Source: Podarcis muralis
Taxonomy: Eukaryota
Direction: 5' to 3'
DNA: 64,000 nucleotides
Assembly (NCBI RefSeq): GCF_964188315.1
Contig: NC_135671.1
Span: 4,154,001-4,218,000 of the forward strand
Made by a program: the position numbers and the translations under genes. This document shows, one piece after another, positions 6,955 through 61,662 of this stretch (its first letter is position 1; every line of letters begins with the position of its first letter). Below the pieces are notes generated by a model. That model had not been told where the DNA came from. It worked only from the letters and a program-made list of their open reading frames with translations, and searched no databases.

Positions 6955-7175
6955 CTTTATATGACCAGTGGAGAACAGAATACTTCTGCCTTCTTTCCAG
7001 AATAGAGAAACTTGCATGGAGGGGAGCCAGCTATTTTCATTTGTTGATTTTGTTTGGATGCAAATCACATCTGGAAAGATTCCATTACAAAATCTATATC
7101 ATATATTCTGCTGTCATATTTGCAAATTCGACAGTGGTGCTAAATATCATCTTTGCATCTGGCTTAACAAACAGT
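6955..7175 (-). promoter_or_regulatory. Shared TAS2R proximal promoter block (TATA box plus octamer sites), representative copy
   Basis: Minus-strand TATAAAG at 6955-6961; ATGCAAAT at 7058-7065; further octamer-like ATTTGCAA and CTTTGCAT sites. The block recurs upstream of every copy. Confidence 0.6.
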
Positions 7176-7886
7176 GATACATGACTCTTTTAGGATTTGT
7201 TTATCTTGATTAATGTTTGTTCACCAGTATTATTATTTTTCATCCATGTGAAAACAGAGATTTCTATCAAATGATTTCATAAATTTATTCTGTTTGTGAG
7301 GGACGTGGTTCTAATTGCTCAAAGAAACAATGCAAGGTGTTTACTTGTGCAGGACAATAGAAGAATTTTTTAAAGAATTGATTCCTTGTTTTCTAAGTTC
7401 TTGCACCTCTTTAAGCAATCAATGGATTTCATACTCAGGTTATCGACCTCTTAAGGGACACCCAGCAGGGCTGCCCTCTGTCGCCATTGCTGGGGGTACT
7501 AGGCATTCAGCTATATAAAGACACCTTCTACAGAGGGTGAGTACCGGTATGTTGGCAGATGACACCCTTTCATCTTTGCAAAATCCAGTAACAGCCTTTA
7601 GCCACCTAAGCGGCAGTTAGAAATGTATCACAGGGTGACAGCTCCCATGACAATGGGAGATTGTTGGCGAAGGAGAAAACAAGGATGATTGTGGGTAATT
7701 ATACTTGCAAGTCTGTCCCCCCGGGCCAGGGTGGAACTGACTTCACTTGCAGATTGTCTCGGTACCTGGCTTCCGCTCCAATATGGAATGAGGGAGGCAG
7801 GGAGATGCTGAGTGCAAAAGCACTTTGCCTGTTGGTAATCCTCCTCCGCCACCATTAAGAAGCAGAGGTTCTTCCACTCATTAAAA

Positions 7887-8125
7887 GCCAGTGTGGTGTA
7901 GTGGTTAAGAGCGGTAGTCTTGTAATCTGGGGAACCGGGTTCAATTCCCCGCTCCTCCACATGCAGCTGCTGGGTGACCTTGGGCCAGTCACACTTCTTT
8001 GAAGTCTCTCAGCCCCATTCACCTCACAGAGTGTTTGTTGTGGGGGAGGAAGGGAAAGGAGAATGTTAGCCGCTTTGAGACTCCTTAAAGGGAGTGAAAG
8101 GCGGGATATCAAATCCAAATCCAAA
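7887..8125 (+). mobile_element. tRNA-headed CORE SINE (Ther1/MIR-derived, Squam3-like)
   Basis: A/B boxes (tggtgtagtgg..ggttcaattcc), CORE motif gctgggtgaccttgggccagtcac, short repeat tail (atccaa). Confidence 0.85.
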
Positions 8126-8132
8126 GTTTAAT

Positions 8133-8465
8133 TATTCGAATCTCAGCTGTCTTTGGCACAGAGAATCAATAATAACCAGAGACAGAGGAGATCCAACAAA
8201 TACTCGTTTATTCAGCTGAGCAAAAGAGAGGTCAGAACACGTCCAAAACAAAGGAATGGAAGTGCCGCACTGAGGAGTTGATTCTTATTTCTTTATAAGC
8301 TCTTTCTTTTCCCCCTTCCCTCTTTCCCCCTCCCTCTTTCCCGCTCCCTTTCAGGGCCTCCTGGCTGTAATCAGACCAGCCTTACTAGAGACGTTGAGCA
8401 AGCTGACCAGACACAGGAAGGAAACTCCTCAATGCCTGTTTCAATACTATTATTCTATCCTAACA
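8133..8465 (-). mobile_element. Solo LTR-like element
   Basis: Minus strand starts TGTTAGG, with TATA-like CTTATAAAG and a downstream AATAAA. Paralog at 11168-12694; partial copy at ~19830-19930. Confidence 0.55.
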
Positions 8466-8511
8466 TAGGCACCTTCTCTGTTCCATTCTTCAGCAAGTAC
8501 AAAAGCTGATA

Positions 8512-9284: not shown

Positions 9285-10205
9285 TCAGCATTTTAGTTGA
9301 TGTAGCATCTTGATTAATTCCTGTTTCAGTTTGGGATTCATGAAGATCAGGATAATGGCATGACCAGAGGAATATGCAGCAATCACATTAAAAAGAATTA
9401 AATGCACCCCATGATCGTTAATGCCCATCCAAGACAAAACTATTGACAAGACTTCCACAAAAACGTTAGTTACGTAGAGAAGGAAGAAAGAAGCCAGGGC
9501 TTTGATGGCATTCAGGTGAACTTCTGTGCTAACATCCCTTGCACTGTTTCGTAGAAGATTTTTGTGCCTCCAAAGAGACGTTAGTAATAAAATGGATGAG
9601 ATCAAAAATATCATTAAAGGAGGGAGATTTGGAAAAACATCTAGTAGGATAAGAAACTCACAGGAATTGGTAGTGTCAATTGTTGAGTCATTGTTATTGT
9701 TTAGATGTGATTCATATGTATTACATTTAGTCATAATAATGCCTGTTATTGTCACAGTGGTGGTGATTGCAGAGAAGACCACTGTCCCCAGAAGCAGCCA
9801 AGGCACCAGTCCAGGGAATCTCCACTTCATTTGCAGGAAGAGAGGGTGGGAGAAGTTGGCAATCTTTACACAGTACAAAACACTGAGCAAAGCGGCAAAC
9901 CAAAGGCTAGCTGTATTTAGAAACACCCATGAGGAATCAGATGAAATTTTTAGGTTCAGTATCTGGAAAGCGTCCACGAAAAAGAGGTTGGATATTTCAG
10001 CCTGTATCAAAACGACATGAAATGAAAATCTGAACAAGCTAAGACAACTCAGGATCATGTCAGCCGGGGATAGTTTTCGGCTTCTAAACCAGTCAATGCA
10101 GTTCACGATAGCAATGAATCCATTTCCCACCATTCCTGTGAGGGTTTCAATCACCAGAAGAATGAATCCAAATAATTCGAACAAGGTAGGCATCTTTCTG
10201 AGCAT
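9285..10205 (-). CDS. TAS2R: Bitter taste receptor, copy 2 (306 aa)
   Basis: Intact 7TM ORF with the same TAS2R motifs. Confidence 0.95.
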   Translation of the reverse strand: MLRKMPTLFELFGFILLVIETLTGMVGNGFIAIVNCIDWFRSRKLSPADMILSCLSLFRFSFHVVLIQAEISNLFFVDAFQILNLKISSDSSWVFLNTASLWFAALLSVLYCVKIANFSHPLFLQMKWRFPGLVPWLLLGTVVFSAITTTVTITGIIMTKCNTYESHLNNNNDSTIDTTNSCEFLILLDVFPNLPPLMIFLISSILLLTSLWRHKNLLRNSARDVSTEVHLNAIKALASFFLLYVTNVFVEVLSIVLSWMGINDHGVHLILFNVIAAYSSGHAIILIFMNPKLKQELIKMLHQLKC

Positions 10206-11167
10206 GAAACAGAAGCGTTTCTTCCAGTGTAATGTGTAATATTAGCACAGTCTGATCCTGATGCTGCCCTTTATATGACCAGTGGAGAACAGAATACTTC
10301 TGCCTACTTTCAAGAACAGAGAAACTTGCAGGGAGGGGAGCCAGCTATTGATTCTGTTCAGATGCAAATCACATCTGGAAAGATTCCATTACTAAATCTA
10401 TATCATATATTCTGCTGTCATTTTTGCAAATTCAACAGTGGTGCTAGATATCATCTTTGCATCTGGCTTGACAAACAGTGATACCTGATTCTTTTAGGAT
10501 TTGTTTATCTTGATTAATGTTTGTTCACCACTATTATTATTTTTCATCCATCTGAAAACAGAGATGTCTATCAAATGATTTCATAAATTTATTCTGTTTG
10601 TGAGGGATGTGGTTCTAATTGCTCAAAGAAATAAAGCAAGGTGTTTAATTGTGCAGGCCAATAGAAGAATTTTTTTTTAGAATTGATTCATTGTTTTCTA
10701 TGTTCTTGCCCCTTTTTACGCAATCAATGGATTTCATACTCAGGTTATCAACCTCTTGAGGGACACCCAGGAGGGCTGCCCTCTTTCGCCATTGCTGTTT
10801 GCATTGTTCATGTGGGTACTAGGCATCCAACTATACAAAGACGCCTTCTAGAGAGGGTGTCATTGTGCAGGATGAGGTACACAAAGTGAGTATGTTGGCA
10901 GATGACACCCTTTCATCTTTGCAAAATCCAATAACAGCCTTTAGCCACCTAAGCGGCAATTAGAAATGTATCACAGGGTAGCAGGATTGCAAATCAGCTA
11001 CTCTAAATCTGAGCCCCTTCTATCAATTTAGAAGCACTACAAGAGGCTGGTTACTAGCTAACTCTCCATTTGCCATAACTCACAGAGAATTTAAGTACCG
11101 TATTTTTTAAGTACCCTCCTCCGTCACCATTAAGAAGCAGAGGTTCTTCTGCTCATTAATAGTTTAA

Positions 11168-13493: not shown

Positions 13494-14420
13494 TCAGCAT
13501 TTTAGTTGATGTAGCATCTTGATTGATTCCTGTTTCAGTTTGGGATTCATGAAGATCATGATAATGGCATGCCCAGAGGAATATGCAGCAATCACATTAA
13601 GAAGAATTAAATGCACCCCATTGTAGTTAAGGCCCTTCCAAATCAAAACTATTGACAAGATTTCCACAAAAACGTTAGTTATGTAGAGAATGGAGAAGGA
13701 AGCCAGAGCTTTGATGGCATTCAGGTGAACTTCTGTGCTGACATCCCTTGCGCTGTTTTGTAACAGATTTTTGTGCCTCCACAGAGAAGTTAGTAATAAA
13801 ATGGATGAGATCAAAAATATCATGAAAGGAAAGAAATTTGATAAAATATCTAGTAGGATAAGAAACTCACAGGAATTCGTCATGCTAATTGCTGAGACGT
13901 TATTGTTTAGATGTGATTCAAATAGATTATGATTACATTTAGACACAATGATATTGCCTGTTATTGTCATAGTGGTGGTGATTGCAGAGAAGACCACTGT
14001 CCCCAGAAGCAGCCAAGGCACCAGCCCAGGGAATCTCCGCTTCATTTGCAGAAAGAGAGGGTGGGAGAAGTTAGCAATTTTTACACAGTACAAAACACTG
14101 AGCCAAGAGGCGAACCAAAGGCTAGGCTTATTAAGATATAGCCACAAGGCATTGTATGCAATATATACGTTCCTTATCTGAAAGGTGTCAACAAAAAAGA
14201 CCTTTATTATTGCAACCTGTATCAAAACGGCATGAAATGCAAATCTGAACAAGCTAAGACAACTCAGTATCATGTCAGCCGGGGATAGTTTTCGGCTTCT
14301 AAACCAGTCAATGCAGTTCACGATAGCAATGAATCCATTTCCCACCATTCCTATGAGGGTTTCAATCACCAGAAGAACAAAGCCAAACAATTCAAATAAG
14401 GTAGGCATCTTTCTGAGCAT
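13494..14420 (-). CDS. TAS2R: Bitter taste receptor, copy 3 (308 aa)
   Basis: Intact 7TM ORF with TAS2R motifs. Confidence 0.95.
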   Translation of the reverse strand: MLRKMPTLFELFGFVLLVIETLIGMVGNGFIAIVNCIDWFRSRKLSPADMILSCLSLFRFAFHAVLIQVAIIKVFFVDTFQIRNVYIAYNALWLYLNKPSLWFASWLSVLYCVKIANFSHPLFLQMKRRFPGLVPWLLLGTVVFSAITTTMTITGNIIVSKCNHNLFESHLNNNVSAISMTNSCEFLILLDILSNFFPFMIFLISSILLLTSLWRHKNLLQNSARDVSTEVHLNAIKALASFSILYITNVFVEILSIVLIWKGLNYNGVHLILLNVIAAYSSGHAIIMIFMNPKLKQESIKMLHQLKC

Positions 14421-15115
14421 GAAATAGAAGCGTTTCTTCCAGTGTAATGTGTAATATTAGCACAGGCTGATGCTGATGCTGCTCTTTATATGACCAGTGG
14501 AGAACAGAATACTTCTGCCTTCTTTCTGGAATAGAGAATCTTGCAGGGAGGGGAGCGAGCTATTTTCATTTGTTGATTCTGTTGAGATGCAAATCACATC
14601 TGGAAAGATTCCATTACTAAATCTAGATCATATATTCTGCAGTCATTTTTGCAAATTCTACAGTGGTGCTAAATATCATCTTTGCATCTGGCTTGACAAA
14701 CAGTGATACATGATTCTTTTAGGATTTGTTTATCTTGATTAATGTTTGTTCACCAGTATGATTATTTTTAATCCATCTGAAAACAGAGATGTGTATCAAA
14801 TGATTTCATAGATTTATCGTGTTTGTGAGGGACGTGGTTCTAATTGGTCAGAGAAATAAAACAGGGTGTTCAATTGTGCATGCCAACACAAGATTTTTTA
14901 AAGAATTGATTCATTGTTTTTGTAGTACTCGCATCTCTTTAAGCAATCAATAGATTTGACGCTCAGGTTTTGACCTCTTAAGGGGCACCCAGCAGGGCTG
15001 CCCTCTGTCACCATTGCTGTTGCGTTGGATGGAAATAATAATAATAAAACAACAACAACCCTCACCCCCCAAAAAACAACCACCACTAGGAACTTAGTGA
15101 TTTTGCAATAGCTAG

Positions 15116-17205: not shown

Positions 17206-18141
17206 TCAATGCTTCATACAGCATTTTAGCTGATATAGCATCTTGATTGATTCCTGTTTTAGTTTGGGACTCATGAAGATCAGGATAATGGCATGACCAG
17301 TGGAATAAGCAGCAATCACATTATAAACAATTAAATGCACCCCATTGTCGTTAATGCCCTTCCAAAACAAAACTATTGACAAGATTTCCACAAAAGCGTT
17401 AGTTACGTAGAGAATGGAGAAAGAAGCCAGGGCTTTGATGGCATTCAGGTGAACTTGTGTGCTGACATCCCTTGCGCTGTTTTGTAACAGATTTTTGTGC
17501 CTCCACAGAGAAGTTTGTAATAAAATGGATGAGAACAAAAACATCGTGAAGGGAAAGAGATACGGAAAAATATATATTGGGATAAGAAACTCACAGGAAT
17601 TGGATGTGTTAATTGCTGAGTCGTTGTTATTGTTTAGATGTGATTCAAATAGATTACATTTAGAAAAAATGTTATTGCCTGTTAATGCCACAGTGGTGGT
17701 GATTGCAGAGAAGCCCACAGTCCCCAGAAGCAGCCAAGGCACCAGCCCAGGGAATCTCCGCTTCATTTGCAGGAAGAGAGGGTGGGAGAAGTTAGCGATT
17801 TTTACACAGTACAGGACACTGAGCCAAGTGGCAAACCAAAGGCTAGCCGTATTAAGAAATAGCCATGAGGAATCATATGCAATGTTTATCTTCAGCATCA
17901 GAACAGGGTCCACGAAAACGAGGTTGAATATTGCAACCTGGACCGTAACGGCATGAAATGCAAATCTGAACAAGCCAAGCAAACTCAGGATCATGTCAAC
18001 CGGGGATAGTTTTCGGCTTCTATGCCAGTCAAGGAAGTTCACGATAGCAATGAATCCATTTCCCACCATTCCTGTGAGGGTTTCAATCACCAGAAGAACG
18101 AAGCCAAACAATTCAAATAAGGTAGGCATCTTTCTGAGCAT
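17206..18141 (-). CDS. TAS2R: Bitter taste receptor, copy 4 (311 aa from first ATG; 4-aa C-terminal extension)
   Basis: Intact 7TM ORF. The ORF-track start at 18168 is TTG; the first ATG is at 18141. Confidence 0.95.
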   Translation of the reverse strand: MLRKMPTLFELFGFVLLVIETLTGMVGNGFIAIVNFLDWHRSRKLSPVDMILSLLGLFRFAFHAVTVQVAIFNLVFVDPVLMLKINIAYDSSWLFLNTASLWFATWLSVLYCVKIANFSHPLFLQMKRRFPGLVPWLLLGTVGFSAITTTVALTGNNIFSKCNLFESHLNNNNDSAINTSNSCEFLIPIYIFPYLFPFTMFLFSSILLQTSLWRHKNLLQNSARDVSTQVHLNAIKALASFSILYVTNAFVEILSIVLFWKGINDNGVHLIVYNVIAAYSTGHAIILIFMSPKLKQESIKMLYQLKCCMKH

Positions 18142-18936
18142 GAAATAGAAGCGTTTCTTCCAGAGCAATGTGTAATATTAGCACAGGCTGATGCTGATGC
18201 TGCTCTTTATATGACCAGTGGAGAACAGAATACTTCTGCCTTCTTTCCAGAATTGAGGAACTTGCAGGGAGAGGAGCGAGCTATTTTCATTTGTTGATTC
18301 TGTTTGGATGCAAATCACATCTGGAAAGATTCCATTACTAAATCTATATCATATATTCTGCTGTCATATTTGCAAATTTGACAGTGGTGCTAAATATCAT
18401 CTTTGCATCTGGCTTAACAAACAGTGATACATGATTCTTTTAGGATTTGTTTATTTTGATTAATGTTTGTTCACTAGTATGATTATTTTTAATCCATCTG
18501 AAAACAGAGATGTCTATCAAATGATTTCATAAATTTATTTTGTTTGTGAGGAATGTTGTTCTAATTGGTCAGAGAAATAAAACAGGGTGTTCAATTGTGC
18601 AGACCAATAGAATTTTTTTTAAAAGAATTCATTTATTGTTTATGTAGTACTTGAACCTCTTTAAGCAGTCAATGGATTTGACGCTCAGGTTTTGACCTCT
18701 TAAGGGACACCCAGCAGGGCTGCCCTCTGTGGCCATTGCTGTTTGCATTGTTCATGGAGGTACTAGGCATCCAACTATGCAAAGACGCATCTACAGACGG
18801 TGTTATTGTGCAGAATGAGGTACACAAAGTATGTTTGCAGATGACACCCTTTTATCTTTGCAAAATCCATTTACAGCCCTTCAACCACTTAAGTGGAAAC
18901 GATAAATGTATCATAGGGTAGCAGGATTTCAAATCA

Positions 18937-22144: not shown

Positions 22145-23064
22145 TCAGCATCTTAGTTGATGTAACATCCTTACTGATTCCTGTTTCAATTTGGGACTCA
22201 TGAAGATCAGGATAAGAGCATGACCAGAGGAATATGCAGCAATCACATTTAAAAAAACGAAATGCACTCCAATGTCGTTAATGCCCATCCGAAACAAAAC
22301 TGTTGACAAAATTTCCACAAAAATGTTAGATACATAGAGAATGGAGAAAGAAGCCAGAGCTTTGATGGCATTCAGGTGAGCTTCTATTCTGACATCCCTC
22401 GCACTGTTTTGTAGAAGATTTTTGTGCCTCCACAGAGAAGTTAGTAATAAAATGGATGAGAACAAAAATATCGCGAAGGGAAAGAAATCTGGAACAACAG
22501 AAGGATAAGAAACTCACAGGAATTGGATGTGTTAATTCCTGAGTCATTATTATTGTTTAGATATGATTCAAATGGATTACATTTAGAAAAAATGTTATTG
22601 CCTGTTAATGCCACAGTGGTGGTGATTGCAGAGAAGACCACTGTCCCCAGAAGCAGCCAAGGCACCAGCCCAGGGAATCTCTGCTTCATTTGCAGGAAGA
22701 GAGGGTGGGAGAAGTTAGCGATTTTTACACAGTACAAGACACTGAGCCAAGCGGCAAACCAAAGGCTGGCCGTATTAAGAAATAACCAGAAGGAATCATA
22801 TGCAATTTTTATCTTCAGCATCAGAAAAGGGTCCACCAAAAAGAGGTTGAATATTGCAGCCTGCATCATAACGGCATGAAATGCAAATCTGAACAAGCCA
22901 AGCAAACTCAGGATCATGTCAGCTGAGGATAGTTTTCGGCTTCTAAAACAGTCAATGCAGTTCACGATAGCAATGAATCCATTTCCCACCATTCCTGTGA
23001 GGGTTTCAATCACCAGAAGAACGAAGCCAAACAATTCAAATAAGTTAAGCATCTTTCTGAGCAT
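22145..23064 (-). pseudogene. TAS2R: Bitter taste receptor, copy 5, frameshifted
   Basis: Relative to paralogs (ctt cta tat gtt gtt cca gat), 4 nt are missing between 22498 and 22499. This gives a 207-aa truncated product; the downstream frame stays open to the normal stop. Confidence 0.88.
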
Positions 23065-24291
23065 GAAATAGAAGCGTTTCTTTTAGTGCAATGTGTAATA
23101 TTAGCACAGGCTGATGCTGATGCTGCCCTTTATATAACCAGTAGAGAACAGAATACTTCTGCCTTCTTTCCAGAATTGAGGAACTTGCAGGGAGAGGAGC
23201 GAGCTATTTTCATTTGTTGATTCTGTTCGGATGCAAATAACATCTGGAAAGATTCCATTACTAAATCTATATCATATATTCTGCTGTCATATTCGCAAAT
23301 TCGACAGTGGTGCTAAATATCATCTTTGCATCTGGCTGGACAAACAGTGATACATGATTCTTTTAGGATTTGTTTATCTTGATTAATGTTTGTTCACCAG
23401 TATGATTATTTTTAATCCATCTGAAAACAGAGATGTCTATCAAATGATTTCATAAATTTATTGTCTTTGTGAGGGACGTGGTTCTAATTGCTCAAAGAAA
23501 TAAAGCAAGGTGTTTAATTGTGCAGGCCAATAGAAGAAATTTTATTAGAATTGATTCATTGTTCTTGCACCTCTTTAAGCAATCAATGGATTTCATACTC
23601 AGGTTATCGACCACATAAGAGACACCCAGCAGGGCTGCCCTCTGTGGCCATTGCTGTTTGCATTGTTCGTGGAGGTACTAGGCATCCAACTATACAAAGA
23701 CGCCTTCTATAGAGGGTGTCATTGTGCAGGATGAGGTACACAAAGTGAGTATGTTGGCAGATGACACCCTTTCATCTTTGCAAAATCCAATAACAGCCTT
23801 TAGGCACCTAAGCGGCAGTTAGAAATGTATCATAGGGTAGCAGGATTGCCAATCAACTACTCTAAATCTGTGATCCTTCCTATCAATTTAGAAGCACTAC
23901 AAGAGGCTGGTTACTAGCTAACTCTCCACTTGCCATAACTCACGGAGAATTTAAGTAGTTAGGTATTAACTTCACTGCAGATACGGCTTCCAGTTCTGGC
24001 TGCCTTAATGGAGACAGCCCCCATGACAATGAGATTAGATTATAGATATGGTTTACAAATTTTAAAAAAGAAACTGTTGTTGGCTCTGCTATTCGAATCT
24101 CAGCTGTCTTTGGCACAGAAAATCAATAACAGTCAGAGATAGATGTCCATACCGGAGGAAGAGCCAGATACTTAGACGAGCTGCGAGTGATGTGTGTTCC
24201 TGCCAGTCCCTGGTTTTCAGGTACAATATCTGTATATTCCTTAGTCATTATCTGCTATCTACCTGATTCATTCATTCATTCAATGCTTCAT

Positions 24292-25572: not shown

Positions 25573-26169
25573 TAGGCATCTTTCTGAGCATGAAATAGAA
25601 GCGTTTCTTCCAGAGTAATGTGTAATATTAGCACAGGCTGATGCTGATGCTGCCCTTTATATGACCAGTGGAGAACAGAATACTTCTGCCTTCTCTCAAG
25701 AATAGAGAAACTTGCAGGGAGGGATGTGCGCTATTTTCATTTGTTGATTCTGTTGAGATGCAAATCACATCTGGAAGATTCCACTACTAAATCTATATCA
25801 TATATTCTGCAGTCATATTTACAAATTCGACACTGGTGCTAAATATCATCTTTGCATCTGGCTTGACGAACAGGGATACATGATTCTTTTAGGATTTGTT
25901 TATTTTGATTAATGTTTGTTCATCAGGATGATTATTTTTCATCCATCTGTAAACAGAGATTTCTATCAAATGATTTCATAAATTTATTGTGTTTGTGAGG
26001 GACGTGTTTCTAATTGGTCAGAGAAATAAAACAGGGTGTTTAATTGTGTCTATTAAATTAAAGAATTGATTCATTGTTTTCTATGTTCTTGCCCCTCTTT
26101 AAGCAATCAATGGATTTGATGCTCAGGTTATCAACCTCTTAAGGGACACCCAGCAGGGCCTTAGCTGGC

Positions 26170-34223: not shown

Positions 34224-34437
34224 TAGAGAGTGAAGGGAGCTATTTTTATTTGTTGATTCTGTTCAGATGCAAATCACACCTGGAAGCATTCTTAGTAATT
34301 CAATATCATCTCTTCTGATATTTGCAAAATCCGCAGTGGTGCTAAATATCATATTGGCACCTGGCTTAACAAAGAATGATATCATTCTTTGTTAAGCCTG
34401 TTGTAAACAAAAACTGCTCCCTTTCCCTTATGAGGTA

Positions 34438-38712: not shown

Positions 38713-39056
38713 CCTTCTGAGCCCGAAGTAAAAGTGTTTCTTCCAGTGTAATATTAGCACAATCTGCTGCTTATGCTGCCTTGTATATGCGCAGTGGAGA
38801 GCAGAATACGTCTGCCTTCTTTCAAGACCAGAACAATTTGCAGGGAGAGGACCGAGCTATTTTCAGTTCTTGATTTTACTCAGATGCAAATCACACATGG
38901 AAAAATTCTAATCCTAAATCTATATCATATTTTCTGCTGTCATATTTGCAAATTCGACAGTGGTGCTAAATATCCTCTCTGCATCTGGCTTAACAAACAA
39001 TGATAGATGATTCTATTATGATTTCTATATTTTGATTATTGTTTGTTCACCACTAT

Positions 39057-47989: not shown

Positions 47990-48170
47990 TGGATATTTAC
48001 AAGATGCCGCTGATACTGCCCTTTATTTATATGACCAGTGTACAGCACAATACTTCTACCTTCTGCCCAGAACAGAAAAACTTGTCAAGAGAGGAGCAAG
48101 CTATTTTCAATCGTTTATTGCGTTCAGATACAAATCACACCTAGAAAGATTGTATTATTAAACTGATATC
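47990..48170 (-). pseudogene. Orphan TAS2R promoter remnant abutting the L1
   Basis: gccctttatttatatgaccagtg..aatacttct..gctattttc..caaatcacacctagaaag matches the promoter block; no CDS downstream. Confidence 0.65.
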
Positions 48171-49404
48171 ATAAGATATACAAAGATATATAAGATATAC
48201 AAGATACACATATATATGAAAGATATACAAGGAATACACCCATTCAAAACCATCCAATTAATTAAAGAAAAGAAAAGTGATTAAAATATTATCAAACAAC
48301 TAAAATGTTAAAGCAGACATTGGTCATCCACCTCGTTTTGCTATTCCTTTAATTTTATTGTTATGGGCCACCCCAATCTCTGCTGAGCTGTAGCAAGAGA
48401 TTTCAGGGGTCTTGGCAATTAACCAGAGTTTGTGTTATCTTGGGGGTGGGGGAAGGGCACAGGGAGTCAGCAGTCTCTTATAAATATGGTTTATTCACAC
48501 ATGTTTACACCTGAAGTCTTCAATGGAAGTGGAGTTCATAGCATTAACATCTCAAGAAGGCCATGTCCTTCCCAGCATTGGATTCAGAGGCATCCAAAGC
48601 ACCACCCACATGTCTATCTGTAACGGCCTGCTCCAGCCAGCCAACATGGCAGCTGCCCTTCAGTCCCCACCTGGAGTTCTCCCCACTTCCTGATTCTTCT
48701 TCCCAGAAACCCCTGCTCTCAAAACCTCTCTTGTAAGACCCCTCTTCCTGTGGTGACATCATGCACCGATCTTACCCTGCTAACCTCCCTCTGTGTCTGG
48801 CTGAGCCTTCTGTCTGGTTGATGCCTTCCCTTGAGGGACTAATGGCTGACTATCAGCTGCATTGTTTCTTCAATGTCCCACCTTCACCAGGCTGGCCCCA
48901 TGAGAAAGTTAGCCGGTGTTATTCCTTGCTTAGTTCAGGAATCCATGAACACTGACCCTTCGCTGAATGTAGACATTATGACAAGCCCCCCCCCCCCCAT
49001 TTATAACATTATTTTAAATCTTTTTTAATAAAGAATTTCCTTAAAACTTTTTTTAATAAAGAATTTCCTTAAAACTACCAACCTAACTTCAAGGGCATAC
49101 CCAGCAGAATGGCATACCCTGCAGAATGACACAATGGGTCAAGGGAGCAATGGGTGAGTGCATCTGGCTGTTAGCCAGAAGGCTGGTGGTTCGAACCCAC
49201 CCAGGGGCAGCTGTGGCCAAGATGAGCTTCGGGGTCCCTTCCAACTCTACAATTCTAGGATTCTAGGATTCTATGTCTGCAAGGCCTTGGCAGTCATGTG
49301 CAGCAGAACTTCTGCTAAACTGTGTCCTCAGCACATGTGTGCACCTGCACACCCACAGGCAGGCAATATAGTTCTTGCAAAAGTGTTGGCGAAATTTGTA
49401 GCCT

Positions 49405-50334
49405 TTAAGATAGTGGCTTCATCCAGCATTTTAGTTGACGTAGCATCTTGAGTGATTCGTGTTTCAGTTTGGGATTAAGGAAGATGAGGATAATGGCATG
49501 GCCAGAGGAATATGCAGCAGTAACATCAGTAAACCAAATATTCATCCCAATGCCTGACATGCCCATCCAAGAGAAGTACGACTGCAAAATATCCACAAAA
49601 AAGCTAGATATGTAGAGAATGGAGAAAGAAGCTAGAGCTTTGATGGCATTCAGGTGAACTTCTGTGCTTACATCCCTTGCACTGTTTTGTAGAAGATTTT
49701 TGTGCCTCCACAAAGAAGTTAGTAGTAAAATTGATGAGAACAAAAATATCAGGAAGGGAAAGAACTCTGGAGCAACAAATAGAAGCGTGGAATACTTACA
49801 AAAGTTAAATGTCTTCATTCCTGAGTCAGTGTTATTGCTTAGAAGTGATTCAATTGTCTTGCATTCAGACATGAGTCTAATGGTCATGATTGTCTCAATG
49901 GTGGTGGTGATTGCAGAGAAGACCACTGTCCCCAGAAGCAGCCAAGGCACCAGCCCAGGGAATCTCCGCTTCATTTGCAGGAAGAGAGGGTGGGAGAAAG
50001 TGGCAATCTTTACACAGTACAAAACACTGAGCCAAGTGGCAAACCAAAGGTTAGCACAATTAACAAATAGCCACAAGGCACTGTATGCAATATGTACCTT
50101 CTTCAGAAAAGTATGTATGAAAAAGAGGAGAAAAATTGCATTCTGTATCGCGAATGCGTGAAATGCAAATCTGAACAAGCTAAGACAACTCAGGATCATG
50201 TCGGCTGGGGACAGTTTTCTGCTTCTCTGCCAGTCAATGAAGTTAACGATAGCAATAAATCCATTTCCCACCATTCCTATGAGGGTTTCAATAACCAGAA
50301 GAATGAAGCCGAACAATTCAAATAAGGTAGACAT
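49405..50334 (-). CDS. TAS2R: Bitter taste receptor, copy 10 (309 aa)
   Basis: Intact 7TM ORF from ATG 50334; C-terminus ..LKCWMKPLS. Confidence 0.95.
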   Translation of the reverse strand: MSTLFELFGFILLVIETLIGMVGNGFIAIVNFIDWQRSRKLSPADMILSCLSLFRFAFHAFAIQNAIFLLFFIHTFLKKVHIAYSALWLFVNCANLWFATWLSVLYCVKIATFSHPLFLQMKRRFPGLVPWLLLGTVVFSAITTTIETIMTIRLMSECKTIESLLSNNTDSGMKTFNFCKYSTLLFVAPEFFPFLIFLFSSILLLTSLWRHKNLLQNSARDVSTEVHLNAIKALASFSILYISSFFVDILQSYFSWMGMSGIGMNIWFTDVTAAYSSGHAIILIFLNPKLKHESLKMLRQLKCWMKPLS

Positions 50335-52073
50335 CCTTCTGAGCCTGATGTAAAAGTGTTTCTTCCAGTGTAATATTAGCACAGTCTGGTGCTTATGCCG
50401 CCTTGTATATGAGCAGTGGAGAGCAGAATACGTCAGCCTTCTTTCAAGACCAGAACAATTTGCAGGGAGAGGACCAAGCTATTTTCAGTTGTTCATTTTA
50501 CTCAGATGCAAATCACACCTGGAAAGATTCTCTTCCTAAATCTATATCATATTATCTACTGTCATATTTGCAAATTCGACAGTGGTGCTAAATATCCTCT
50601 TTGCATCTGGCTTAACAAAGAATGATAGATGATTCTTTTATGATTTCTATATTTTGATTAAAGTTTGTTCACCAAACTTTAATGTTAACATCTCAAGATT
50701 GTCCTCCTCAACATTCTATTCAGAGGCACCACCCACATGTGTAGCAGCCTGCTCCAACCAACCAGTTGCCCCTCAGTCCCCACCTGGAGTTCTCCATCAC
50801 TTCCTCATTCTTCTTTCCCAAAACCCGTGCTCTCAAAACCTCTCTTGGAAGGCAACAACCGCTCTCCCTGTGGTTACCCTAGCAACCTCCCTCTGTGCCT
50901 GGCAGAGCCTTCGGTCTGGTTGATGCCTTCCCTTGAGGGGCTAATGGCTGACCATCAGCTGCATTGTATCGTCAATGTCCCACCATCACCAGGCTGGCCC
51001 CATGAGAAAGTTAGCTGGTGTTATTCCCAGCCTTTGCTTAGTCCAGGAATCCACAAACACTGACCCTTCACTGAATGCAGATATTTTGAGGAGTTTCTCC
51101 TGCCCACCCGATTCATAACATTGTTTTCAATTACTTAAAACTACCAACAGATTGATATATTGTGACTTTAATGTCATATGAAAAATGAGGTCGTTGTATG
51201 CTCTCCACTCTCCTCACTCTGAGAGCATCGTGGATTTAGATCTGTTTGGGTAAATAAGGAAAGAAAAGCACTAGGGATTTACAATTGCTATTTGATTTGT
51301 TAAAACACACATAAAATATCCAAGCATGAGACATTTCAGAGATTCTGGTGTTTTCTTGGTTCAGTTCCTTTGGAATGAAGTCAGTGGGGGCTTGCTGGTA
51401 TTTTCCGATTTAGAAGCATACAGGTAGGAGACAGGTGAAAGCTAATCTTTAAACATTCTAACATGTCTCATATCTCTTGGCTCCCCCACCAGATTTTCAG
51501 AGACAAAGCCAGCACCACCAGCTCCTTTCAGAGATCCACTCAGTGCTCTCCTATTACTGGTAGAACATCACACAAAAAGGCTGGATCCTCCACTTTTAGC
51601 TCACTCTGTCCTTTCCCATTTCAATGCAGCTTGCTGTCCCTGAGGCACATATTTCACAGGTGAACTGACCGTTCAAGGAAATAGACACAGCCATTAAGAA
51701 ACACCAACATCTTCACAGCTCTGTTGTCTCAAACAGCAGCCAAGTCACAATTCTGTGTAAAGAGTAGGTTAATATGGATATATGAAAGCAAAACACAGAA
51801 ATGGGAAGGGAATTCCTTTGACAGAATAATTGCTGTTCCATTAAGAAAACAGAGTGAATGTGGTATCAAAAAACCCCAGAAAAGGGCACAAGCAGCAGAA
51901 AATTCTCCTGTGCAAACCTCTATACAATGGCTTGGCAGTCTTCTGCAGAGGAACATCTGCTAGACTGTCCTCAGTGCATGTGTGTCACACGCAGACAGGC
52001 AGGAAGCAATCTTCTTGCAAAAGAAGAAGCCACTTCTATACAGTCTTGGTAGAATTTGAGATGGTGGCTTCAA

Positions 52074-52997
52074 TTAGCATTTCAGTTGATGTAGCATCTT
52101 GATTGCTTCTTGTTTCAATTTGGGATTAATGAAGAGCAGGATAACGGCATGGCCAGAGGAATATGCAATAATCACATTTAAAAGGAAGAAAAGCTTCCCA
52201 ATACCTTGCATGCCCATCGCAAACAAAATTATCGACAAAATTTCGACAACAAAGCTAGCTACGTAGAGAATGCAGAAAGAAGCCAGAGCTCTGATGGCAT
52301 TCCGGTGAGCTTCGGTGCTGACATCCTTTGCACTGTTTTGTAGCAACTTTTTGTGCCGCCACAGAGAAGTGAGTAGTAAGATGGACGAGGACAAAAATAT
52401 CACGAAGGGAAATAAATTCGGAACAACATATAGAAGGAGAAGATACTTACAGGAGTTGAAAATTTCATTTTCCGAGTCACTATTATTGGTCAGAAGTGAT
52501 TCAAAAGAATTGCATTTAGAAACATTGGCTTTGGATGTACCTGTGGCAATGGTGCTGATTGCAGAGAAGACCACTGTTCCTAGAAGCAGCCAAGGCACCA
52601 GCCCAGGGAATCTCCGCTTCATTTGGAGGAAGAGAGGGTGGGAGAAGTTAGCGATTTTTACACAGTACAAGACACTGAGCCAAGTGCCAAGCCAAAGATC
52701 AGCTGTATTGATAAATAACCATGAGATGTAATATGCCACTTTTAGGTGCTTGAATTGATCAGTCTTCATGAAAAAGAGGATAGAAATTGCATACTGTATG
52801 ACAACTGCATGAAATAGAAATCTGAAGAAGCCAAGACAGCTCAGGATCCTGTCAGCTGGGGATAGTTTTCTGCTTCTAAACCAGTCAATGCAGTTAATGA
52901 TAACAATAAATCCATTTCCCACCATTCCTATGAGGGTTTCAATAACAAGAAGAACAAAGTTGAACAATTGAAATACGGTAGGCATCTTTCTGAGCAT
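52074..52997 (-). CDS. TAS2R: Bitter taste receptor, copy 11 (307 aa)
   Basis: Intact 7TM ORF with TAS2R motifs. Confidence 0.95.
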   Translation of the reverse strand: MLRKMPTVFQLFNFVLLVIETLIGMVGNGFIVIINCIDWFRSRKLSPADRILSCLGFFRFLFHAVVIQYAISILFFMKTDQFKHLKVAYYISWLFINTADLWLGTWLSVLYCVKIANFSHPLFLQMKRRFPGLVPWLLLGTVVFSAISTIATGTSKANVSKCNSFESLLTNNSDSENEIFNSCKYLLLLYVVPNLFPFVIFLSSSILLLTSLWRHKKLLQNSAKDVSTEAHRNAIRALASFCILYVASFVVEILSIILFAMGMQGIGKLFFLLNVIIAYSSGHAVILLFINPKLKQEAIKMLHQLKC

Positions 52998-53799
52998 GAA
53001 ATGAAAGTGTTTCCTCCACTGTAATGTGCAATATCTGCAAGGTCTACTCCCGCCTTCTCCCTACAACAGAAAAAACTTGGAGAGAGATGAGGGAGATAGT
53101 TTCATTTGTTGATTCTGTTCAGATGCAAATTATACCCGGTAGGACTCAAATGCTGAATCTGTAATATCTCTTATGATAATATATTTGCAATTTCTACAGA
53201 GGTGCTAAATATCATCTTTGCATCTGGCTAAATATCATCTTTGCATCTGGCTTAACAAACAAGGATATGTGAATCTTTTACGATTTGTGTATTTTGAATG
53301 ATATTTTTCCACCCGTATCAACATTTCCAATCCACCCAAAAACATACTTTTTCCTCCAAAGGTTTAGGAAGTTTACTTGGTTTCTATGTGAAGTTGTTCT
53401 AATTGGTTGAATAATTGAAGCAGGGATTTATATTTGTCAGGCCAATGGAGGAATGTTTACAATTACACTCCCTGGTAAATAGGAATTGGTGCAAGAGCCT
53501 GCTCTGTCTCACAAATAGCCAAAAACCAAATGAAACAGTGAGTGAAAAAGCAGTCCAGAGTATTTTCTTTTCTGCGCAGAAAGGACCAGCAGGGATATTT
53601 CCCCAAATTAACTGGCCATGTGCCAATAGATTCCCTACCATTTTATAAACTTAATGGAATGTTTGGAAATTGACAATGCACAAAGTTTAAATTTCCAATC
53701 CAATCAAAACACTTAGTTTCCTTCACCCCATTTCCCTTTAAGGCACTTTAAGCATATTCCATGCTGTCTCCCTATGATTGGTCCAAATTACAAACAGTA

Positions 53800-59045: not shown

Positions 59046-59254
59046 ACACATCTCACATTAACGGTGTCTCCAGACATGAAGAAACTCCTCTCCTTGTGCC
59101 ACCTCCTCCATTTGTCATTTGGGGAGGAGAGACAGAAGAGCAGTGTGTCTCAGTGCTGCTCTCTCACTTAAAGAATGCTCTCCCCAGTGAGGCATGCCTG
59201 GCACCCGCTTGTTGGGGTGTGTGTTTTTCTTCCTCCTGTAAATCTTGTTATGTT

Positions 59255-59610
59255 TGTATGCCCCACAGATGCTTCAGTCAAGTAGTTAAGCTCAAACACA
59301 AAACAGTTGTTTTAAGCAAAGTTGTGCACACAAAACACACACTTTATTTACACACTTTATACAGGTTACACGATGCCTTCTCTCTCTGAGCCCAGAGAGG
59401 GCAATTTGCTTCAAAGTCATTGCAGTGTTAAGGTTCACAGCTAAGTCCAAATTCAGTTTTTTTAAGAGCCTTGCAACTGATGGAGTTTTCTGAGTTCTGA
59501 AGTCTGTCAGTTTTCCAACTTCTTTTTTAGACAATCTCTTCAAAAATTCTTCACTCAAATCTGCAGTTCCAATAGATAACCTTCAACAATTCCTGCTGCC
59601 ATGACCCACA
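59255..59610 (-). mobile_element. LTR-like element (paralog starts at 63737 and runs off the window)
   Basis: TG..CA ends, minus-strand AATAAA; duplicated together with its flank at ~63590-64000. Confidence 0.4.
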
Positions 59611-60181
59611 CAGTATATTGTAAACTGAGCCCCTTTATACAGAAAGTTAATTGCCAAATGTGTCCAGTAACACAGATAAGAGAGTCACGAAATGCCTGCA
59701 GCTGCATTGTGGGGCATGAGTAATCTCTGCTGACTTACTCCACTGGTGAACTGACCATTCAAAGAAAGAGGTAGAACCAACTTCTCCACAGCACTGTTGT
59801 CTCATACAGCAGCCACCCAACAATTCTGTGTAAATAATTAGGAGAATGTTGATGTGGATATCAGAAATCAAAACACAGAAGGGGGAAGAAACCTCCTTTG
59901 GAAGAATATTTGTCTGGTTTTGATATAATAATAAATCATTAAGAAAACAGAGTGAATATAGTATCAAAAAATGCAGAAATTCCACACCAAGATGGAAGTT
60001 CTCCTGTGCATACGCCTATACAATGGCTTGGCTGTCTTCTACAGAGGAACATCTGCTAGACTGTCCTCACTGCATATGTGTCACATGTACACCCACAGGC
60101 AGGCAGGCAAGCAGCATTGTTCTTGCAGAAGAAGAAGCCACTTCCATACAGTCTTGGTAGACTTTGAGACGGTGGCTTCAA

Positions 60182-61105
60182 TCAGCATTTTAGTTGATGT
60201 AGCATCTTGATTGATTCTTGTTTCAGTTTGGGATTAATGAAGAGCAGGATAACTGCATGGCCAGAGGAATATGCAATAATCAAATTGAAAAGAAAAAATT
60301 GCTTCCCAATGCCTTTCATGCCCATCTGAAATAAAACTATTGACAAAATTTCCACAAAAAAGCTAGCTACGTAGAGAATGCAGAAAGAAGTCAGAGCTTT
60401 GATGGCATTCTGGTGAGCTTTGGTGCTGACATCCTTTGCACTGTTTTGTAGTAACTTTTTGTGCCGCCACAGAGAAGTGAGTAGTAAGATGGACGAGGAC
60501 AAAAATATCATGAAGGGAAATAAATTCGGAACAACATATAGAAGGAGAAGATACTTACAGGAGTTGAAAATTTCATTTTCCGAGTCACTATTATTGGTCA
60601 GAAGTGATTCAAAAGAATTACATTTAGAAACATTGGCTTTGGATGTACCTGTTCCAATGGTGCTGATTGCAGAGAAGACCACTGTTCCTAGAAGCAGCCA
60701 AGGCACCAGCCCAGGGAATCTCCGCTTCATTTGGAGGAAGAGAGGGTGGGAGAAGTTAGCGATTTTTACACAGTACAAGACACTGAGCCAAGTGCCAAGC
60801 CAAAGATCAGCTGTATTGATAAATGACCATGAGATGTAATGTGCCACTTTTAGGTGCTTGAATTGATCAGTCTTCATGAAAAAGAGGATAGAAATTCCAT
60901 AGTGTATGACAACTGCATGAAATAGAAATCTGAAGAAGCCAAGACAGCTCAGGATCATGTCAGCTGGGGATAGTTTTTTGCTTCTAAACCAGTCGATGCA
61001 GTTAACGATAACAATAAATCCATTTCCCATCATTCCTATGAGGGTTTCAATAACAAGAAGAACAAAGATGAACAATTGAAATAAGGTCGGCATCTTTCTG
61101 AGCAT
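60182..61105 (-). CDS. TAS2R: Bitter taste receptor, copy 12 (307 aa; closest to copy 11)
   Basis: Intact 7TM ORF with TAS2R motifs. Confidence 0.95.
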   Translation of the reverse strand: MLRKMPTLFQLFIFVLLVIETLIGMMGNGFIVIVNCIDWFRSKKLSPADMILSCLGFFRFLFHAVVIHYGISILFFMKTDQFKHLKVAHYISWSFINTADLWLGTWLSVLYCVKIANFSHPLFLQMKRRFPGLVPWLLLGTVVFSAISTIGTGTSKANVSKCNSFESLLTNNSDSENEIFNSCKYLLLLYVVPNLFPFMIFLSSSILLLTSLWRHKKLLQNSAKDVSTKAHQNAIKALTSFCILYVASFFVEILSIVLFQMGMKGIGKQFFLFNLIIAYSSGHAVILLFINPKLKQESIKMLHQLKC

Positions 61106-61662
61106 GAAATGAAAGTGTTTCCTCCACCGTAATGTGCAATATCTGCAAGGTCTACTCCTGCCTTCTCCTTACAACAGAAAAACTTGTAGAGACAGGAGGG
61201 AGATAGTTTCATTTGTTGATTCTGTTCAGATGCAAATCACACCTGGAAAGATTCTATTACTAAATCTGTATCATCTGTCCTGTTGTCATATTTGCAAATT
61301 CTACAGAGGTGCTAAATATCATCTTTGCATCTGGCTTAACAAACAAGGATATGTGATTATTTTACAATTTGTTTATTTTGATTAATGCTTGTTCACCAGT
61401 ATCAATGTCTCCAATCCATCCAAAAACATACTTTTCTTCTTCTTCAAAGGTTCAATAAGTTGACTTAGTTTCTACGTCAAGTTGTTCTAATTGGTTGAAT
61501 AATTAAAGCAGGGTGTTATATTTGTCAGGGCAATGGAGGAATGTTTACAATTACACTCCCTGGTAAACAGGAATTGGTGGAATTAAACATCAGGAAGTGT
61601 AGAGAGATTTTACAGACGTGTAAAGGAGAGGGGAAGTCAAAACCTGCCCAATACAGTTTGCT

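What the first reader, a model, noticed from the sequence alone, without database searches (positions are those of the whole stretch)
7058..61237. Perfect POU octamer ATGCAAAT upstream of every receptor: candidate POU2F3 taste-cell module
Seen: ATGCAAAT at 7058, 10362, 14587, 18308, 23231, 25758, 34267, 38884, 41621, 50506, 53123 and 61230 (12 of 12 genes), and at orphan 29189. Adjacent bases vary, and two 7/8 octamer-like sites (ATTTGCAA, CTTTGCAT) follow within ~100 bp. The gene-less remnant at ~48128 has ATACAAAT. Established: POU2F3 binds the octamer and specifies type II taste and tuft cells in mammals. Inference: direct POU2F3 control of reptile TAS2R promoters. Caveat: shared descent alone preserves much of this block.
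Basis: partly seen in the sequence, partly recalled or inferred. Interest (0 to 1): 0.7.

Follow-up and report, generated by a model that had tools for sequence, protein, structure and literature searches.

The report
Conserved octamer in bitter-receptor promoters
Every bitter-taste receptor gene in this lizard gene cluster carries the same 8-base POU-factor binding site about 170 bases before its start codon. The same site sits in the same place in geckos, a skink, a turtle, a bird and three mammals, so it is very likely a selected promoter switch and not a leftover of gene duplication.

Summary
ATGCAAAT occurs 23 times in the window against 5.6 expected. Read in gene orientation each is ATTTGCAT, 132-184 nt upstream of the ATG of a minus-strand TAS2R gene, further where a SINE has inserted.

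Inside the window, the octamer gives the only invariant 8-column windows in the aligned upstream DNA (2 of 462).

The decisive test was other species. A perfect ATTTGCAT lies 153-194 nt upstream of the TAS2R ATG in Lacerta, Rhineura, a gecko, a skink, a turtle, emu, vole and bat, and 364 nt upstream in sheep. It is the only 8-mer shared by all seven lineage groups. The chance probability is about 1e-12 or less. Shared descent of the array therefore cannot explain it.

Best reading: a selected promoter-proximal POU site. It resembles the octamer of immunoglobulin V promoters. It has the A at position 5 that OCA-type coactivators need.

That the factor is POU2F3 is an inference and was not tested here. 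I found no earlier report in the searchable library.

The parts
7058..7065 (-). promoter octamer ATTTGCAT of gene u7058 (174 nt from its first base to the ATG at 6891)
10362..10369 (-). promoter octamer of gene u10362 (164 nt to the ATG at 10205)
14587..14594 (-). promoter octamer of gene u14587 (174 nt to the ATG at 14420)
18308..18315 (-). promoter octamer of gene u18308 (174 nt to the ATG at 18141)
23231..23238 (-). promoter octamer of the frameshifted copy u23231 (174 nt to the ATG at 23064)
25758..25765 (-). promoter octamer of gene u25758, moved to 562 nt from the ATG (25203) by a repeat insertion at the very start of the coding sequence
29189..29196 (-). octamer of a gene-less ('orphan') promoter copy. 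The orthologous orphan in Lacerta agilis (L001:2446) also keeps it.
34267..34274 (-). promoter octamer of gene u34267. A SINE-like insertion starts about 60 nt downstream, so the distance to the ATG (33857) is 417 nt.
38884..38891 (-). promoter octamer of gene u38884 (179 nt to the ATG at 38712)
41621..41628 (-). promoter octamer of gene u41621 (184 nt to the ATG at 41444)
50506..50513 (-). promoter octamer of gene u50506 (179 nt to the ATG at 50334)
53123..53130 (-). promoter octamer of gene u53123 (133 nt to the ATG at 52997). The TATA segment is deleted in this copy.
61230..61237 (-). promoter octamer of gene u61230 (132 nt to the ATG at 61105). The TATA segment is deleted in this copy.
14484..14687 (-). 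Representative proximal promoter block (unit u14587). In gene orientation: inverted 7/8 site ATGCAAAG (-93), ATTTGCAA 7/8 site (-62), perfect octamer (0), TATA-like cATATAAAg (+104), ATG (+174). The same layout occurs in the other units.
5974..6891 (-). TAS2R gene, intact (305 aa)
9285..10205 (-). TAS2R gene, intact (306 aa)
13494..14420 (-). TAS2R gene, intact (308 aa)
17206..18141 (-). TAS2R gene, intact
22148..23064 (-). TAS2R copy with a frameshift near residue 190 (probable pseudogene or assembly error)
24292..25203 (-). TAS2R gene, intact ORF (equals P0006)
32946..33857 (-). TAS2R gene, intact (303 aa)
37798..38712 (-). TAS2R gene, intact
40512..41444 (-). TAS2R gene, intact
49405..50334 (-). 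TAS2R gene, intact
52074..52997 (-). TAS2R gene, intact (307 aa)
60182..61105 (-). TAS2R gene, intact (307 aa)
48009..48173 (-). gene-less promoter remnant whose octamer has decayed to ATTTGTAT (ATACAAAT on the + strand at about 48128)
1299..1387 (-). gene-less remnant of the upstream half of the promoter block. Homology ends at the position of the octamer.

Best explanation
The 8-mer is a selected, promoter-proximal POU-domain binding site (octamer) that belongs to the core promoter of TAS2R bitter-receptor genes.

In the lizard array it sits in a fixed layout. There are two weaker octamer-like sites at -93 and -62, the perfect ATTTGCAT at 0, a TATA-like box about 100 nt downstream, and the ATG about 70 nt after that. 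If the TATA box is used, the octamer lies roughly 130 nt upstream of the transcription start.

The site was already present in the TAS2R promoter of the common ancestor of amniotes. It has been copied along with every gene duplication and kept by purifying selection.

Most likely mechanism (inferred): a class II POU factor binds the site and recruits an OCA-type coactivator, which needs the adenine at octamer position 5 that this site has. In taste type II and solitary chemosensory (tuft-like) cells that factor would be POU2F3 with OCA-T1/T2. Each receptor promoter would then directly read out the lineage master regulator. This is the same logic by which immunoglobulin V-gene promoters (octamer plus TATA) read out Oct-1/Oct-2 plus OCA-B in B cells.

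Shown here: the site, its layout, and its conservation above background within the array and across amniotes. Inferred: which protein binds, and that binding activates transcription.

The confidence value of 0.6 is for the whole statement including POU2F3. For 'a selected functional POU-type promoter element' alone it is about 0.9.
For: 1. Enrichment: 23 matches against 5.6 expected, and 0 of 100 shuffles reach 23.
2. All 12 TAS2R copies and one orphan promoter carry the site at a homologous position.
3. On a tree of the 13 copies (tree length 1.74), Fitch changes per site are 1.09 at codon position 3, 0.78 at codon position 2 and about 0.87 in the proximal promoter. ATTTGCATC is a run of 9 invariant columns. 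Only 2 of 462 upstream 8-column windows (226 of them proximal) have zero changes, and both are the octamer.
4. Other species: a perfect sense-strand ATTTGCAT lies 153-194 nt upstream of the ATG in Lacerta agilis (2 genes), Rhineura floridana, Heteronotia binoei, Emys orbicularis (a gene and a pseudogene), Dromaius, Lerista, Chionomys TAS2R41 and a Molossus TAS2R41-like gene. It lies 364 nt upstream in two Ovis TAS2R42-like genes. A second Lerista gene has it inverted at -203.
5. An unbiased k-mer count shows ATTTGCAT is the only 8-mer present within 450 nt upstream of the ATG in all 7 lineage groups. The best unrelated 8-mer reaches 4 of 7.
6. Background density in the same loci is 6.6e-5 per strand-position. 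P(6 of 7 lineages hit a 62-nt zone) = 3e-14, and P(7 of 7 hit a 300-nt zone) = 1e-12.
7. Outside the octamer and a short 5' flank, the promoters of turtle, bird, mammals and lizards no longer match.
8. Decay where the gene is gone: three of six gene-less or pseudogene copies have lost the site (r48128 mutated, r1300 truncated, Lacerta pseudogene deleted) against 1 of 24 intact genes (Fisher p = 0.018).
9. OCA-T binding to POU2F3 requires A at octamer position 5 (PMC12755459). ATGCAAAT has it.
10. In mouse scATAC-seq, Tas2r loci are open almost only in type II taste cells and POU-family motifs are enriched in type II peaks (PMC10239704).
Against: - There is no binding, accessibility or transcript data for any of these promoters, and the transcription start is not mapped.
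- The octamer is not specific to POU2F3. Oct-1 (ubiquitous), Oct-2, POU3 and POU5 factors and Pit-1 bind it or close variants.
- The same mouse study found no correlation between the Pou2f3 gene score and its motif accessibility, and its authors suggested a repressor role.
- One intact gecko gene has only a 7/8 site, ATTTGCCT.
- The orphan promoter at 29189, the frameshifted copy and a turtle pseudogene still keep the site, so the decay argument is only moderate.
- Sheep genes have it at -364, not about -180.
- The TATA box is missing in two window copies and was not seen in several other species.
- Amphibians and fishes could not be examined.
- Sampling per lineage is small: 1-2 genes outside the lacertids.
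Confidence: 0.6

Rival explanations
1. Pure shared descent. The octamer is one stretch of a recently duplicated block (possibly homogenised by gene conversion) and has not had time to mutate. It has no function of its own.
For: The whole roughly 280-bp proximal block is conserved among the window copies at about 0.87 changes per site, no faster than the coding sequence. Gene-less copies at 29189 and its Lacerta orthologue still have the site.
Against: The site is retained at the same position in gecko, skink, turtle, emu, vole, bat and sheep TAS2R promoters, which otherwise no longer align with the lizard promoter. It is the only 8-mer shared by all lineages, with chance probability of about 1e-12 or less. 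Within the window it gives the only invariant non-coding 8-column windows.
Confidence: 0.03
2. The site is functional but is read by a POU factor other than POU2F3, for example ubiquitous Oct-1 (POU2F1) acting as a general promoter factor as at histone H2B and snRNA genes, or a POU3- or Pit-1-class factor. Cell-type restriction would then come from chromatin or from other elements in the cluster.
For: ATGCAAAT is the shared consensus of class II POU factors (established knowledge). [quoted passage not shown] Pou2f3 gene score did not correlate with its motif accessibility (PMC10239704). Intergenic type II-specific peaks that could be enhancers exist in the mouse Tas2r clusters.
Against: Motif models of POU factors are nearly interchangeable, so those labels do not discriminate between factors. 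POU2F3 is the POU factor known to be required for the cells that express Tas2r genes (established knowledge; cited). The site keeps the A5 required for OCA-type coactivators. An Oct-1-only housekeeping promoter would not fit the very restricted expression of TAS2R genes.
Confidence: 0.25
3. The conserved unit is a larger composite element in which the octamer is only one half, for example a homeodomain or Sox partner site plus the octamer, or a pair of inverted octamer-like sites bound cooperatively. The partner, not the POU factor, would give specificity.
For: An AATC motif lies exactly 8 nt 5' of the octamer in gecko, turtle, emu and sheep, and 12 nt 5' in lacertids. An inverted NNGCAAAT lies 49-61 nt upstream in squamates, emu, vole and bat. 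ATTTGCAT-CCA-AACAAAAT in u7058 and ATTTGCAT-CCC-AACAAAC in turtle resemble an Oct-Sox element with a 3-bp spacer (the comparison with the FGF4 enhancer is from memory).
Against: None of the partner motifs is present in all lineages. The Sox core is AACAG, which is not a Sox core, in 9 of 13 window copies; three others have AGTAA or AGCAA. No MORE or PORE dimer site is present at the promoter. These flank patterns were found after the fact.
Confidence: 0.15

Closest known systems
Immunoglobulin V-gene promoters (octamer ATGCAAAT/ATTTGCAT plus TATA box; Oct-1/Oct-2 with coactivator OCA-B/POU2AF1)
   Same: Both are large, tandemly duplicated receptor gene families in which every member's proximal promoter carries a perfect octamer upstream of a TATA-like box. 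The site occurs in either orientation (sense in most TAS2R genes, inverted in one skink gene). A5 is present, as OCA coactivators require (PMC12755459). Details of the Ig promoters are from established knowledge.
   Different: The gene family, tissue and presumed factor differ (POU2F3 with OCA-T1/T2 in place of Oct-2 with OCA-B). The distance to the TATA box is about 100 nt here, longer than I recall for Ig promoters. There is no heptamer partner. Function here is untested.
POU2F3/OCA-T target elements in tuft cells and tuft-like small-cell lung cancer
   Same: The DNA motif is the same, including adenine at position 5, which the ternary complex requires (PMC12755459). TAS2R genes are expressed in POU2F3-dependent cell types.
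   Different: None of the papers found in the held-library searches (not all were read in full) reports TAS2R promoters as direct POU2F3 targets or notes a conserved octamer in them. No occupancy data exist for these sites.
Conserved promoter motifs of other chemoreceptor multigene families (olfactory receptor promoters with homeodomain and O/E sites)
   Same: A short TF motif is kept in the proximal promoter of most members of a fast-evolving, tandemly arrayed chemoreceptor family, while the rest of the promoter diverges (established knowledge; a resemblance only).
   Different: The motif and factor class differ. TAS2R genes are co-expressed in groups rather than one per cell.
Known regulators of TAS2R transcription (SREBP-2 at T2R138; NF-kB at Tas2r102/116)
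   Same: Both concern proximal TAS2R promoter sites (PMC5299619; PMC10239704).
   Different: Those are gene-specific, inducible inputs described in mouse. The octamer is family-wide and amniote-wide.

Membership tests
TAS2R bitter taste receptor genes | Intronless ORF of about 300 aa matching Pfam PF05296 over its full length | tested here: met
   E = 3e-70 to 4e-72 over profile positions 1-303 for three representatives. Twelve copies were found by tblastn, 11 uninterrupted. Closest proteins are lacertid TAS2Rs.
Octamer-type (Ig V-like) promoter | Perfect ATGCAAAT/ATTTGCAT in the proximal promoter of every family member | tested here: met
   13 of 13 promoter copies in the window. 23 of 24 intact TAS2R genes across the window and 9 loci.
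Octamer-type (Ig V-like) promoter | Octamer upstream of a TATA box or transcription start at a short fixed distance | tested here: inconclusive
   A TATA-like box (ATATAAAG and variants) lies about 100 nt downstream of the octamer in 10 of the 13 window promoter copies and in Lacerta. It is deleted in u53123 and u61230, cut off by an insertion in u34267, and not evident in turtle, vole, bat and sheep. The transcription start is not mapped.
Octamer-type (Ig V-like) promoter | Site conserved above the neutral background | tested here: met
   It gives the only invariant 8-column windows among 462 upstream windows. It is the only 8-mer shared by 7 amniote lineages. P is about 1e-12 or less.
Octamer-type (Ig V-like) promoter | Promoter activity depends on the octamer and on a POU factor | not testable with these tools
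   Needs reporter assays with octamer mutants.
Direct POU2F3/OCA-T target | Octamer with adenine at position 5 (needed for OCA-T docking) | tested here: met
   ATGCAAAT has A5. The requirement is stated in PMC12755459. The two 7/8 sites, ATGCAAAG and TTGCAAAT, also keep A5.
Direct POU2F3/OCA-T target | Occupancy by POU2F3 in taste or chemosensory cells, and expression lost without POU2F3 for reasons beyond loss of the cell type | not testable with these tools
   No ChIP, CUT&Tag or ATAC data for lizard or other species are available here. No such result for Tas2r promoters was found in the library.
Direct POU2F3/OCA-T target | POU2F3 and OCA-T genes present in the species | not tested
Dimeric POU elements (MORE / PORE) | ATGCATATGCAT or ATTTGAAATGCAAAT at the site | tested here: not met
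   There is no match with 2 or fewer mismatches (MORE) or 3 or fewer mismatches (PORE) centred on the promoter site beyond the octamer half itself. The only PORE-like strings (12 of 15) are the coding-sequence octamers.
Sox-Oct composite element | Sox core (ACAA[A/T]) directly beside the octamer at fixed spacing | tested here: not met
   Only u7058 (AACAAAAT) and the turtle (AACAAAC) have a Sox core 3 nt after the octamer. Nine window copies have AACAG and three have AGTAA or AGCAA.

The most novel reading that the evidence does not exclude
The octamer is the ancestral, family-wide promoter code of TAS2R genes throughout amniotes, and perhaps all bony vertebrates. POU2F3 with OCA-T would license every bitter-receptor promoter directly. 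The TAS2R family would then be the chemosensory counterpart of immunoglobulin V genes (Oct-2/OCA-B). That would explain in one step why TAS2R genes are expressed wherever POU2F3 tuft-like cells arise (tongue, airway, gut, thymus). The extra inverted octamer-like sites and the AATC flank would tune which receptors are on.
Probability: 0.45. Interest if true: 0.75.

Novelty: new member of a known kind. Interest (0 to 1): 0.66.

Why it matters
Reviews and recent papers describe the transcriptional control of bitter receptors as poorly understood. Only SREBP-2 and NF-kB inputs at single genes have been reported.

A single 8-bp element kept in TAS2R promoters since the divergence of the mammalian and reptile/bird lineages gives a concrete, testable link between the receptors and the master regulator of the cells that express them. 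It points to a minimal promoter usable for taste-cell and tuft-cell-specific transgenes in many species. It offers a simple rule for telling live TAS2R genes from dead copies. It also gives a reason why extra-oral TAS2R expression follows POU2F3-positive tuft and solitary chemosensory cells.

Tried and rejected
- **Chance occurrence:** rejected.
- **Shared descent only:** rejected by the cross-amniote loci.
- **Coding-sequence octamers as a second regulatory site:** the nine copies about 183 nt into the ORF encode R-F-A-F-H. They are lost in the three genes with RFSFH or RFLFH and are absent outside the lacertid-amphisbaenian lineage. I treat them as a coding coincidence.
- **MORE/PORE dimer sites and a Sox-Oct composite:** not met.
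- **Reaching amphibians:** two caecilian look-ups returned gene tables but no DNA.
- **Reaching anamniotes by protein search:** the third protein search, seeded with an unnamed Logan protein, found only mammalian TAS2R42 relatives.
- **Elephant TAS2R7 look-up:** returned no DNA. Fishes and frogs therefore remain untested.
- **Other ORFs of the window:** Pfam scan of five non-TAS2R ORFs (46138-46864 on both strands, 55179-55751, 27939-28394, 5419-5985) found nothing.
- the first tree run failed on a thread setting and was repeated.
- **Not done:** the large representative protein search, structure prediction and RNA tools were not used, because the proteins are plainly TAS2Rs and the question concerns DNA.
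- **Primates:** primate hits in the protein lists were deliberately not fetched. No contig taken for human was handled.

Full report
**What is in the window**

The 64-kb window has no N runs. It holds a tandem array of twelve TAS2R bitter-receptor genes, all on the minus strand. Three representatives match Pfam PF05296 end to end (E about 1e-70). tblastn finds twelve copies. Eleven are uninterrupted. One, with its ATG at 23064, is split by a frameshift near residue 190.

Two database proteins with masked sources are identical to window genes. They lie on a 42,472,336-bp contig, the same length as a contig that carries a named Podarcis muralis TAS2R. The closest named proteins are from Podarcis and Lacerta. 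The window is therefore a lacertid, most likely Podarcis muralis.

The repeat unit runs from about 30 nt past the stop codon to 300-600 nt upstream of the ATG.

**Check of the observation**

ATGCAAAT occurs 23 times against 5.6 expected, and no shuffle reaches 23.

In gene orientation each reads ATTTGCAT.
- The distance to the ATG is 132-184 nt in ten copies. It is 417 nt in u34267 and 562 nt in u25758, where repeat elements have been inserted.
In gene orientation they are ATGCAAAG at -93 and ATTTGCAA at -62. The second is part of the palindrome ATTTGCAAAT in most copies.

- Nine more perfect octamers lie inside the coding sequences (codons R-F-A-F-H). A tenth lies on the other strand at 36353.
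- One of the 'genes' is frameshifted.
- A second promoter remnant at about 1299-1387 stops right at the octamer.
- A TATA-like box (cATATAAAg) lies about 100 nt downstream of the octamer and about 70 nt upstream of the ATG in most copies.

**Conservation inside the window**

I aligned the 13 units plus the two remnants and built a tree of the 13 units (tree length 1.74). I then counted parsimony changes per column.

| Region | Changes per site |
|---|---|
| Codon position 1 | 1.04 |
| Codon position 2 | 0.78 |
| Codon position 3 | 1.09 |
| Proximal promoter | about 0.87 |

The coding sequence therefore evolves almost neutrally, and the proximal promoter is at least as conserved as the coding sequence. 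ATTTGCATC is a run of nine invariant columns, the longest in the non-coding part. Of 462 upstream 8-column windows (226 in the proximal block), only two have zero changes, and both are the octamer. With 13 related copies, though, it is only moderately strong on its own.

**Conservation in other species, the decisive test**

I fetched the DNA around TAS2R genes found by the protein search.

| Species | Locus | Octamer position relative to ATG |
|---|---|---|
| Lacerta agilis (2 genes) | L001 | -174 and -174 |
| Rhineura floridana | L002 | -180 |
| Heteronotia binoei (gecko) | L003 | -162 |
| Emys orbicularis (turtle) | L004 | -182; about -181 at a neighbouring pseudogene |
| Dromaius (emu) | L005 | -184 |
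| Lerista (skink) | L006 | -153; a second gene has it inverted at -203 |
| Chionomys (vole) TAS2R41 | L007 | -194 |
| Molossus (bat) TAS2R41-like | L008 | -193 |
| Ovis (sheep) TAS2R42-like (2 genes) | L009 | -363 and -364 |

The exceptions are informative. An intact second gecko gene has ATTTGCCT, a 7/8 match. A frameshifted Lacerta pseudogene has the octamer deleted.

A count of all 8-mers in the 450 nt upstream of the ATG shows that ATTTGCAT is the only one present in all seven lineage groups. The groups are lacertoids, gecko, skink, turtle, emu, TAS2R41 and TAS2R42. The best unrelated 8-mer reaches four groups.

The background density of the octamer elsewhere in the same loci is 6.6e-5 per strand-position. 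That gives P = 3e-14 for six of seven lineages falling in one 62-nt zone, and 1e-12 for seven of seven in a 300-nt zone.

Outside the octamer and a short flank, these promoters no longer resemble each other. The retention is therefore selective and not inherited inertia.

Across the window and the loci, 23 of 24 intact genes have a perfect site, against 3 of 6 gene-less or broken copies (Fisher p = 0.018).

**How it most likely works**

The layout is octamer-like sites, then a perfect octamer, then a TATA box, then a short leader and the ATG. This is the layout of an octamer-dependent promoter. The classic case is the immunoglobulin V-gene promoter, read by Oct-1/Oct-2 with the B-cell coactivator OCA-B (established knowledge).

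[quoted passage not shown] They bind only when POU2F3 sits on an octamer with adenine at position 5 (PMC12755459). ATGCAAAT and both 7/8 sites have that adenine.

In mouse, TAS2R genes are expressed in POU2F3-dependent type II taste cells and tuft or solitary chemosensory cells. Tas2r loci are accessible almost only in type II cells, and POU-family motifs are enriched in type II peaks (PMC10239704).

I therefore think the most likely mechanism is direct activation of each TAS2R promoter by POU2F3 with OCA-T. This step is inferred. The sequence cannot distinguish POU2F3 from Oct-1 or other POU factors. The mouse study itself saw no correlation between the Pou2f3 gene score and motif accessibility.

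My confidence by claim:

| Claim | Confidence |
|---|---|
| The site is a selected functional element | about 0.9 |
| A POU factor reads it | about 0.8 |
| The factor is POU2F3 | about 0.55 |

**Comparison with what is known, and novelty**

The motif, the factor family and the link between POU2F3 and the taste lineage are all known. A 2017 review names SREBP-2 as the only regulator shown for TAS2R transcription (PMC5299619). A 2023 paper adds NF-kB at two mouse genes and calls the field understudied.

Seven full-text searches combining TAS2R or bitter receptor with octamer, POU2F3, Skn-1a, OCA-T, promoter, ChIP-seq and cis-regulatory found no paper that reports a conserved octamer in TAS2R promoters. 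The library lacks most subscription journals, so a prior report cannot be excluded.

I rate this as a new member of a known kind: an octamer-type promoter for a second large receptor family.

**Limits**

- Only one or two genes were sampled per non-lacertid lineage.
- No amphibian or fish DNA could be obtained. One further mammal locus (elephant) also returned no DNA.
- Transcription starts are unmapped.
- The flank patterns (AATC 8 nt 5' of the site; an inverted NNGCAAAT about 55 nt upstream; a Sox-like core in two lineages) were seen after the fact. They are reported as leads only.
- No human contig was fetched, and primate hits were left alone.

Noticed in passing
window 6708, 14237, 17958, 22881, 25032, 33686, 38541, 41273, 50163 (+ strand coordinates); also L002:10105: Nine more perfect octamers, in the same orientation as the promoter site, lie about 183 nt inside the coding sequences at codons R-F-A-F-H. 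With their 3' neighbours (ATTTGCATTTCATGC) they match a PORE-type POU dimer site at 12 of 15 bases. They are lost in the three genes that encode RFSFH or RFLFH and are absent outside the lacertid-amphisbaenian lineage, so they are probably a coding coincidence.
   Followed up: partly
gene orientation -49 to -61 from the octamer: window units; L003; L005:~9764; L007:~9758; L008:~9757: A second octamer-like site in the opposite orientation (TTGCAAAT or GTGCAAAT in squamates, AGGCAAAT in emu and vole, AAGCAAAT in bat) recurs 49-61 nt upstream of the perfect site in four lineage groups. It is absent in turtle, skink and sheep. The pattern was found after the fact, but at roughly 0.008 per lineage it is unlikely to be chance.
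   Followed up: partly
L003:9815-9818, L004:9807-9810 and 7804-7807, L005:9805-9808, L009:9625-9628; window units 12 nt 5' of each octamer: The motif AATC lies exactly 8 nt 5' of the octamer in gecko, turtle, emu and sheep. It lies 12 nt 5' in lacertids, which have 4 extra bases, and 11 nt 5' as AGTC in Rhineura. This may be a partner half-site.
   Followed up: partly
Nine window copies have AACAG and three have AGTAA or AGCAA, none of which is a Sox core.
   Followed up: partly
window ~25210-25600 and ~33940-34215: Two repeat (SINE-like) insertions separate a promoter from its gene. In u25758 the insertion is at the very start of the coding sequence, and the ATG region seems to be duplicated on both sides. 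In u34267 it starts about 60 nt after the octamer. Both ORFs are still intact, so these are natural tests of whether promoter distance matters.
   Followed up: no
window 29005-29452 and L001:~2300-2700: A complete promoter block (both 7/8 sites, octamer, TATA, leader) has no TAS2R coding sequence behind it. It is kept at the syntenic place in Lacerta agilis. Whether it drives anything is unknown. The ORF downstream (27939-28394) has no Pfam match.
   Followed up: partly
window 53216-53246: The inverted 7/8 site ATGCAAAG with its flank is tandemly duplicated (a 23-bp repeat) in unit u53123, giving four octamer-like sites in that promoter.
   Followed up: no
window ~52998-53122 and ~61106-61229: Units u53123 and u61230 share a deletion of about 41 nt that removes the TATA-like box. 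The ORFs remain intact and the octamer is kept, so these two genes may use a TATA-less start.
   Followed up: no
window 46138-46864 and 54000-58000: An overlapping pair of ORFs of more than 200 aa lies on opposite strands in Ser/Pro/Glu-rich sequence, with no Pfam match. A G+C-rich stretch (0.51-0.52 against about 0.42 elsewhere) interrupts the array. Neither was identified.
   Followed up: partly
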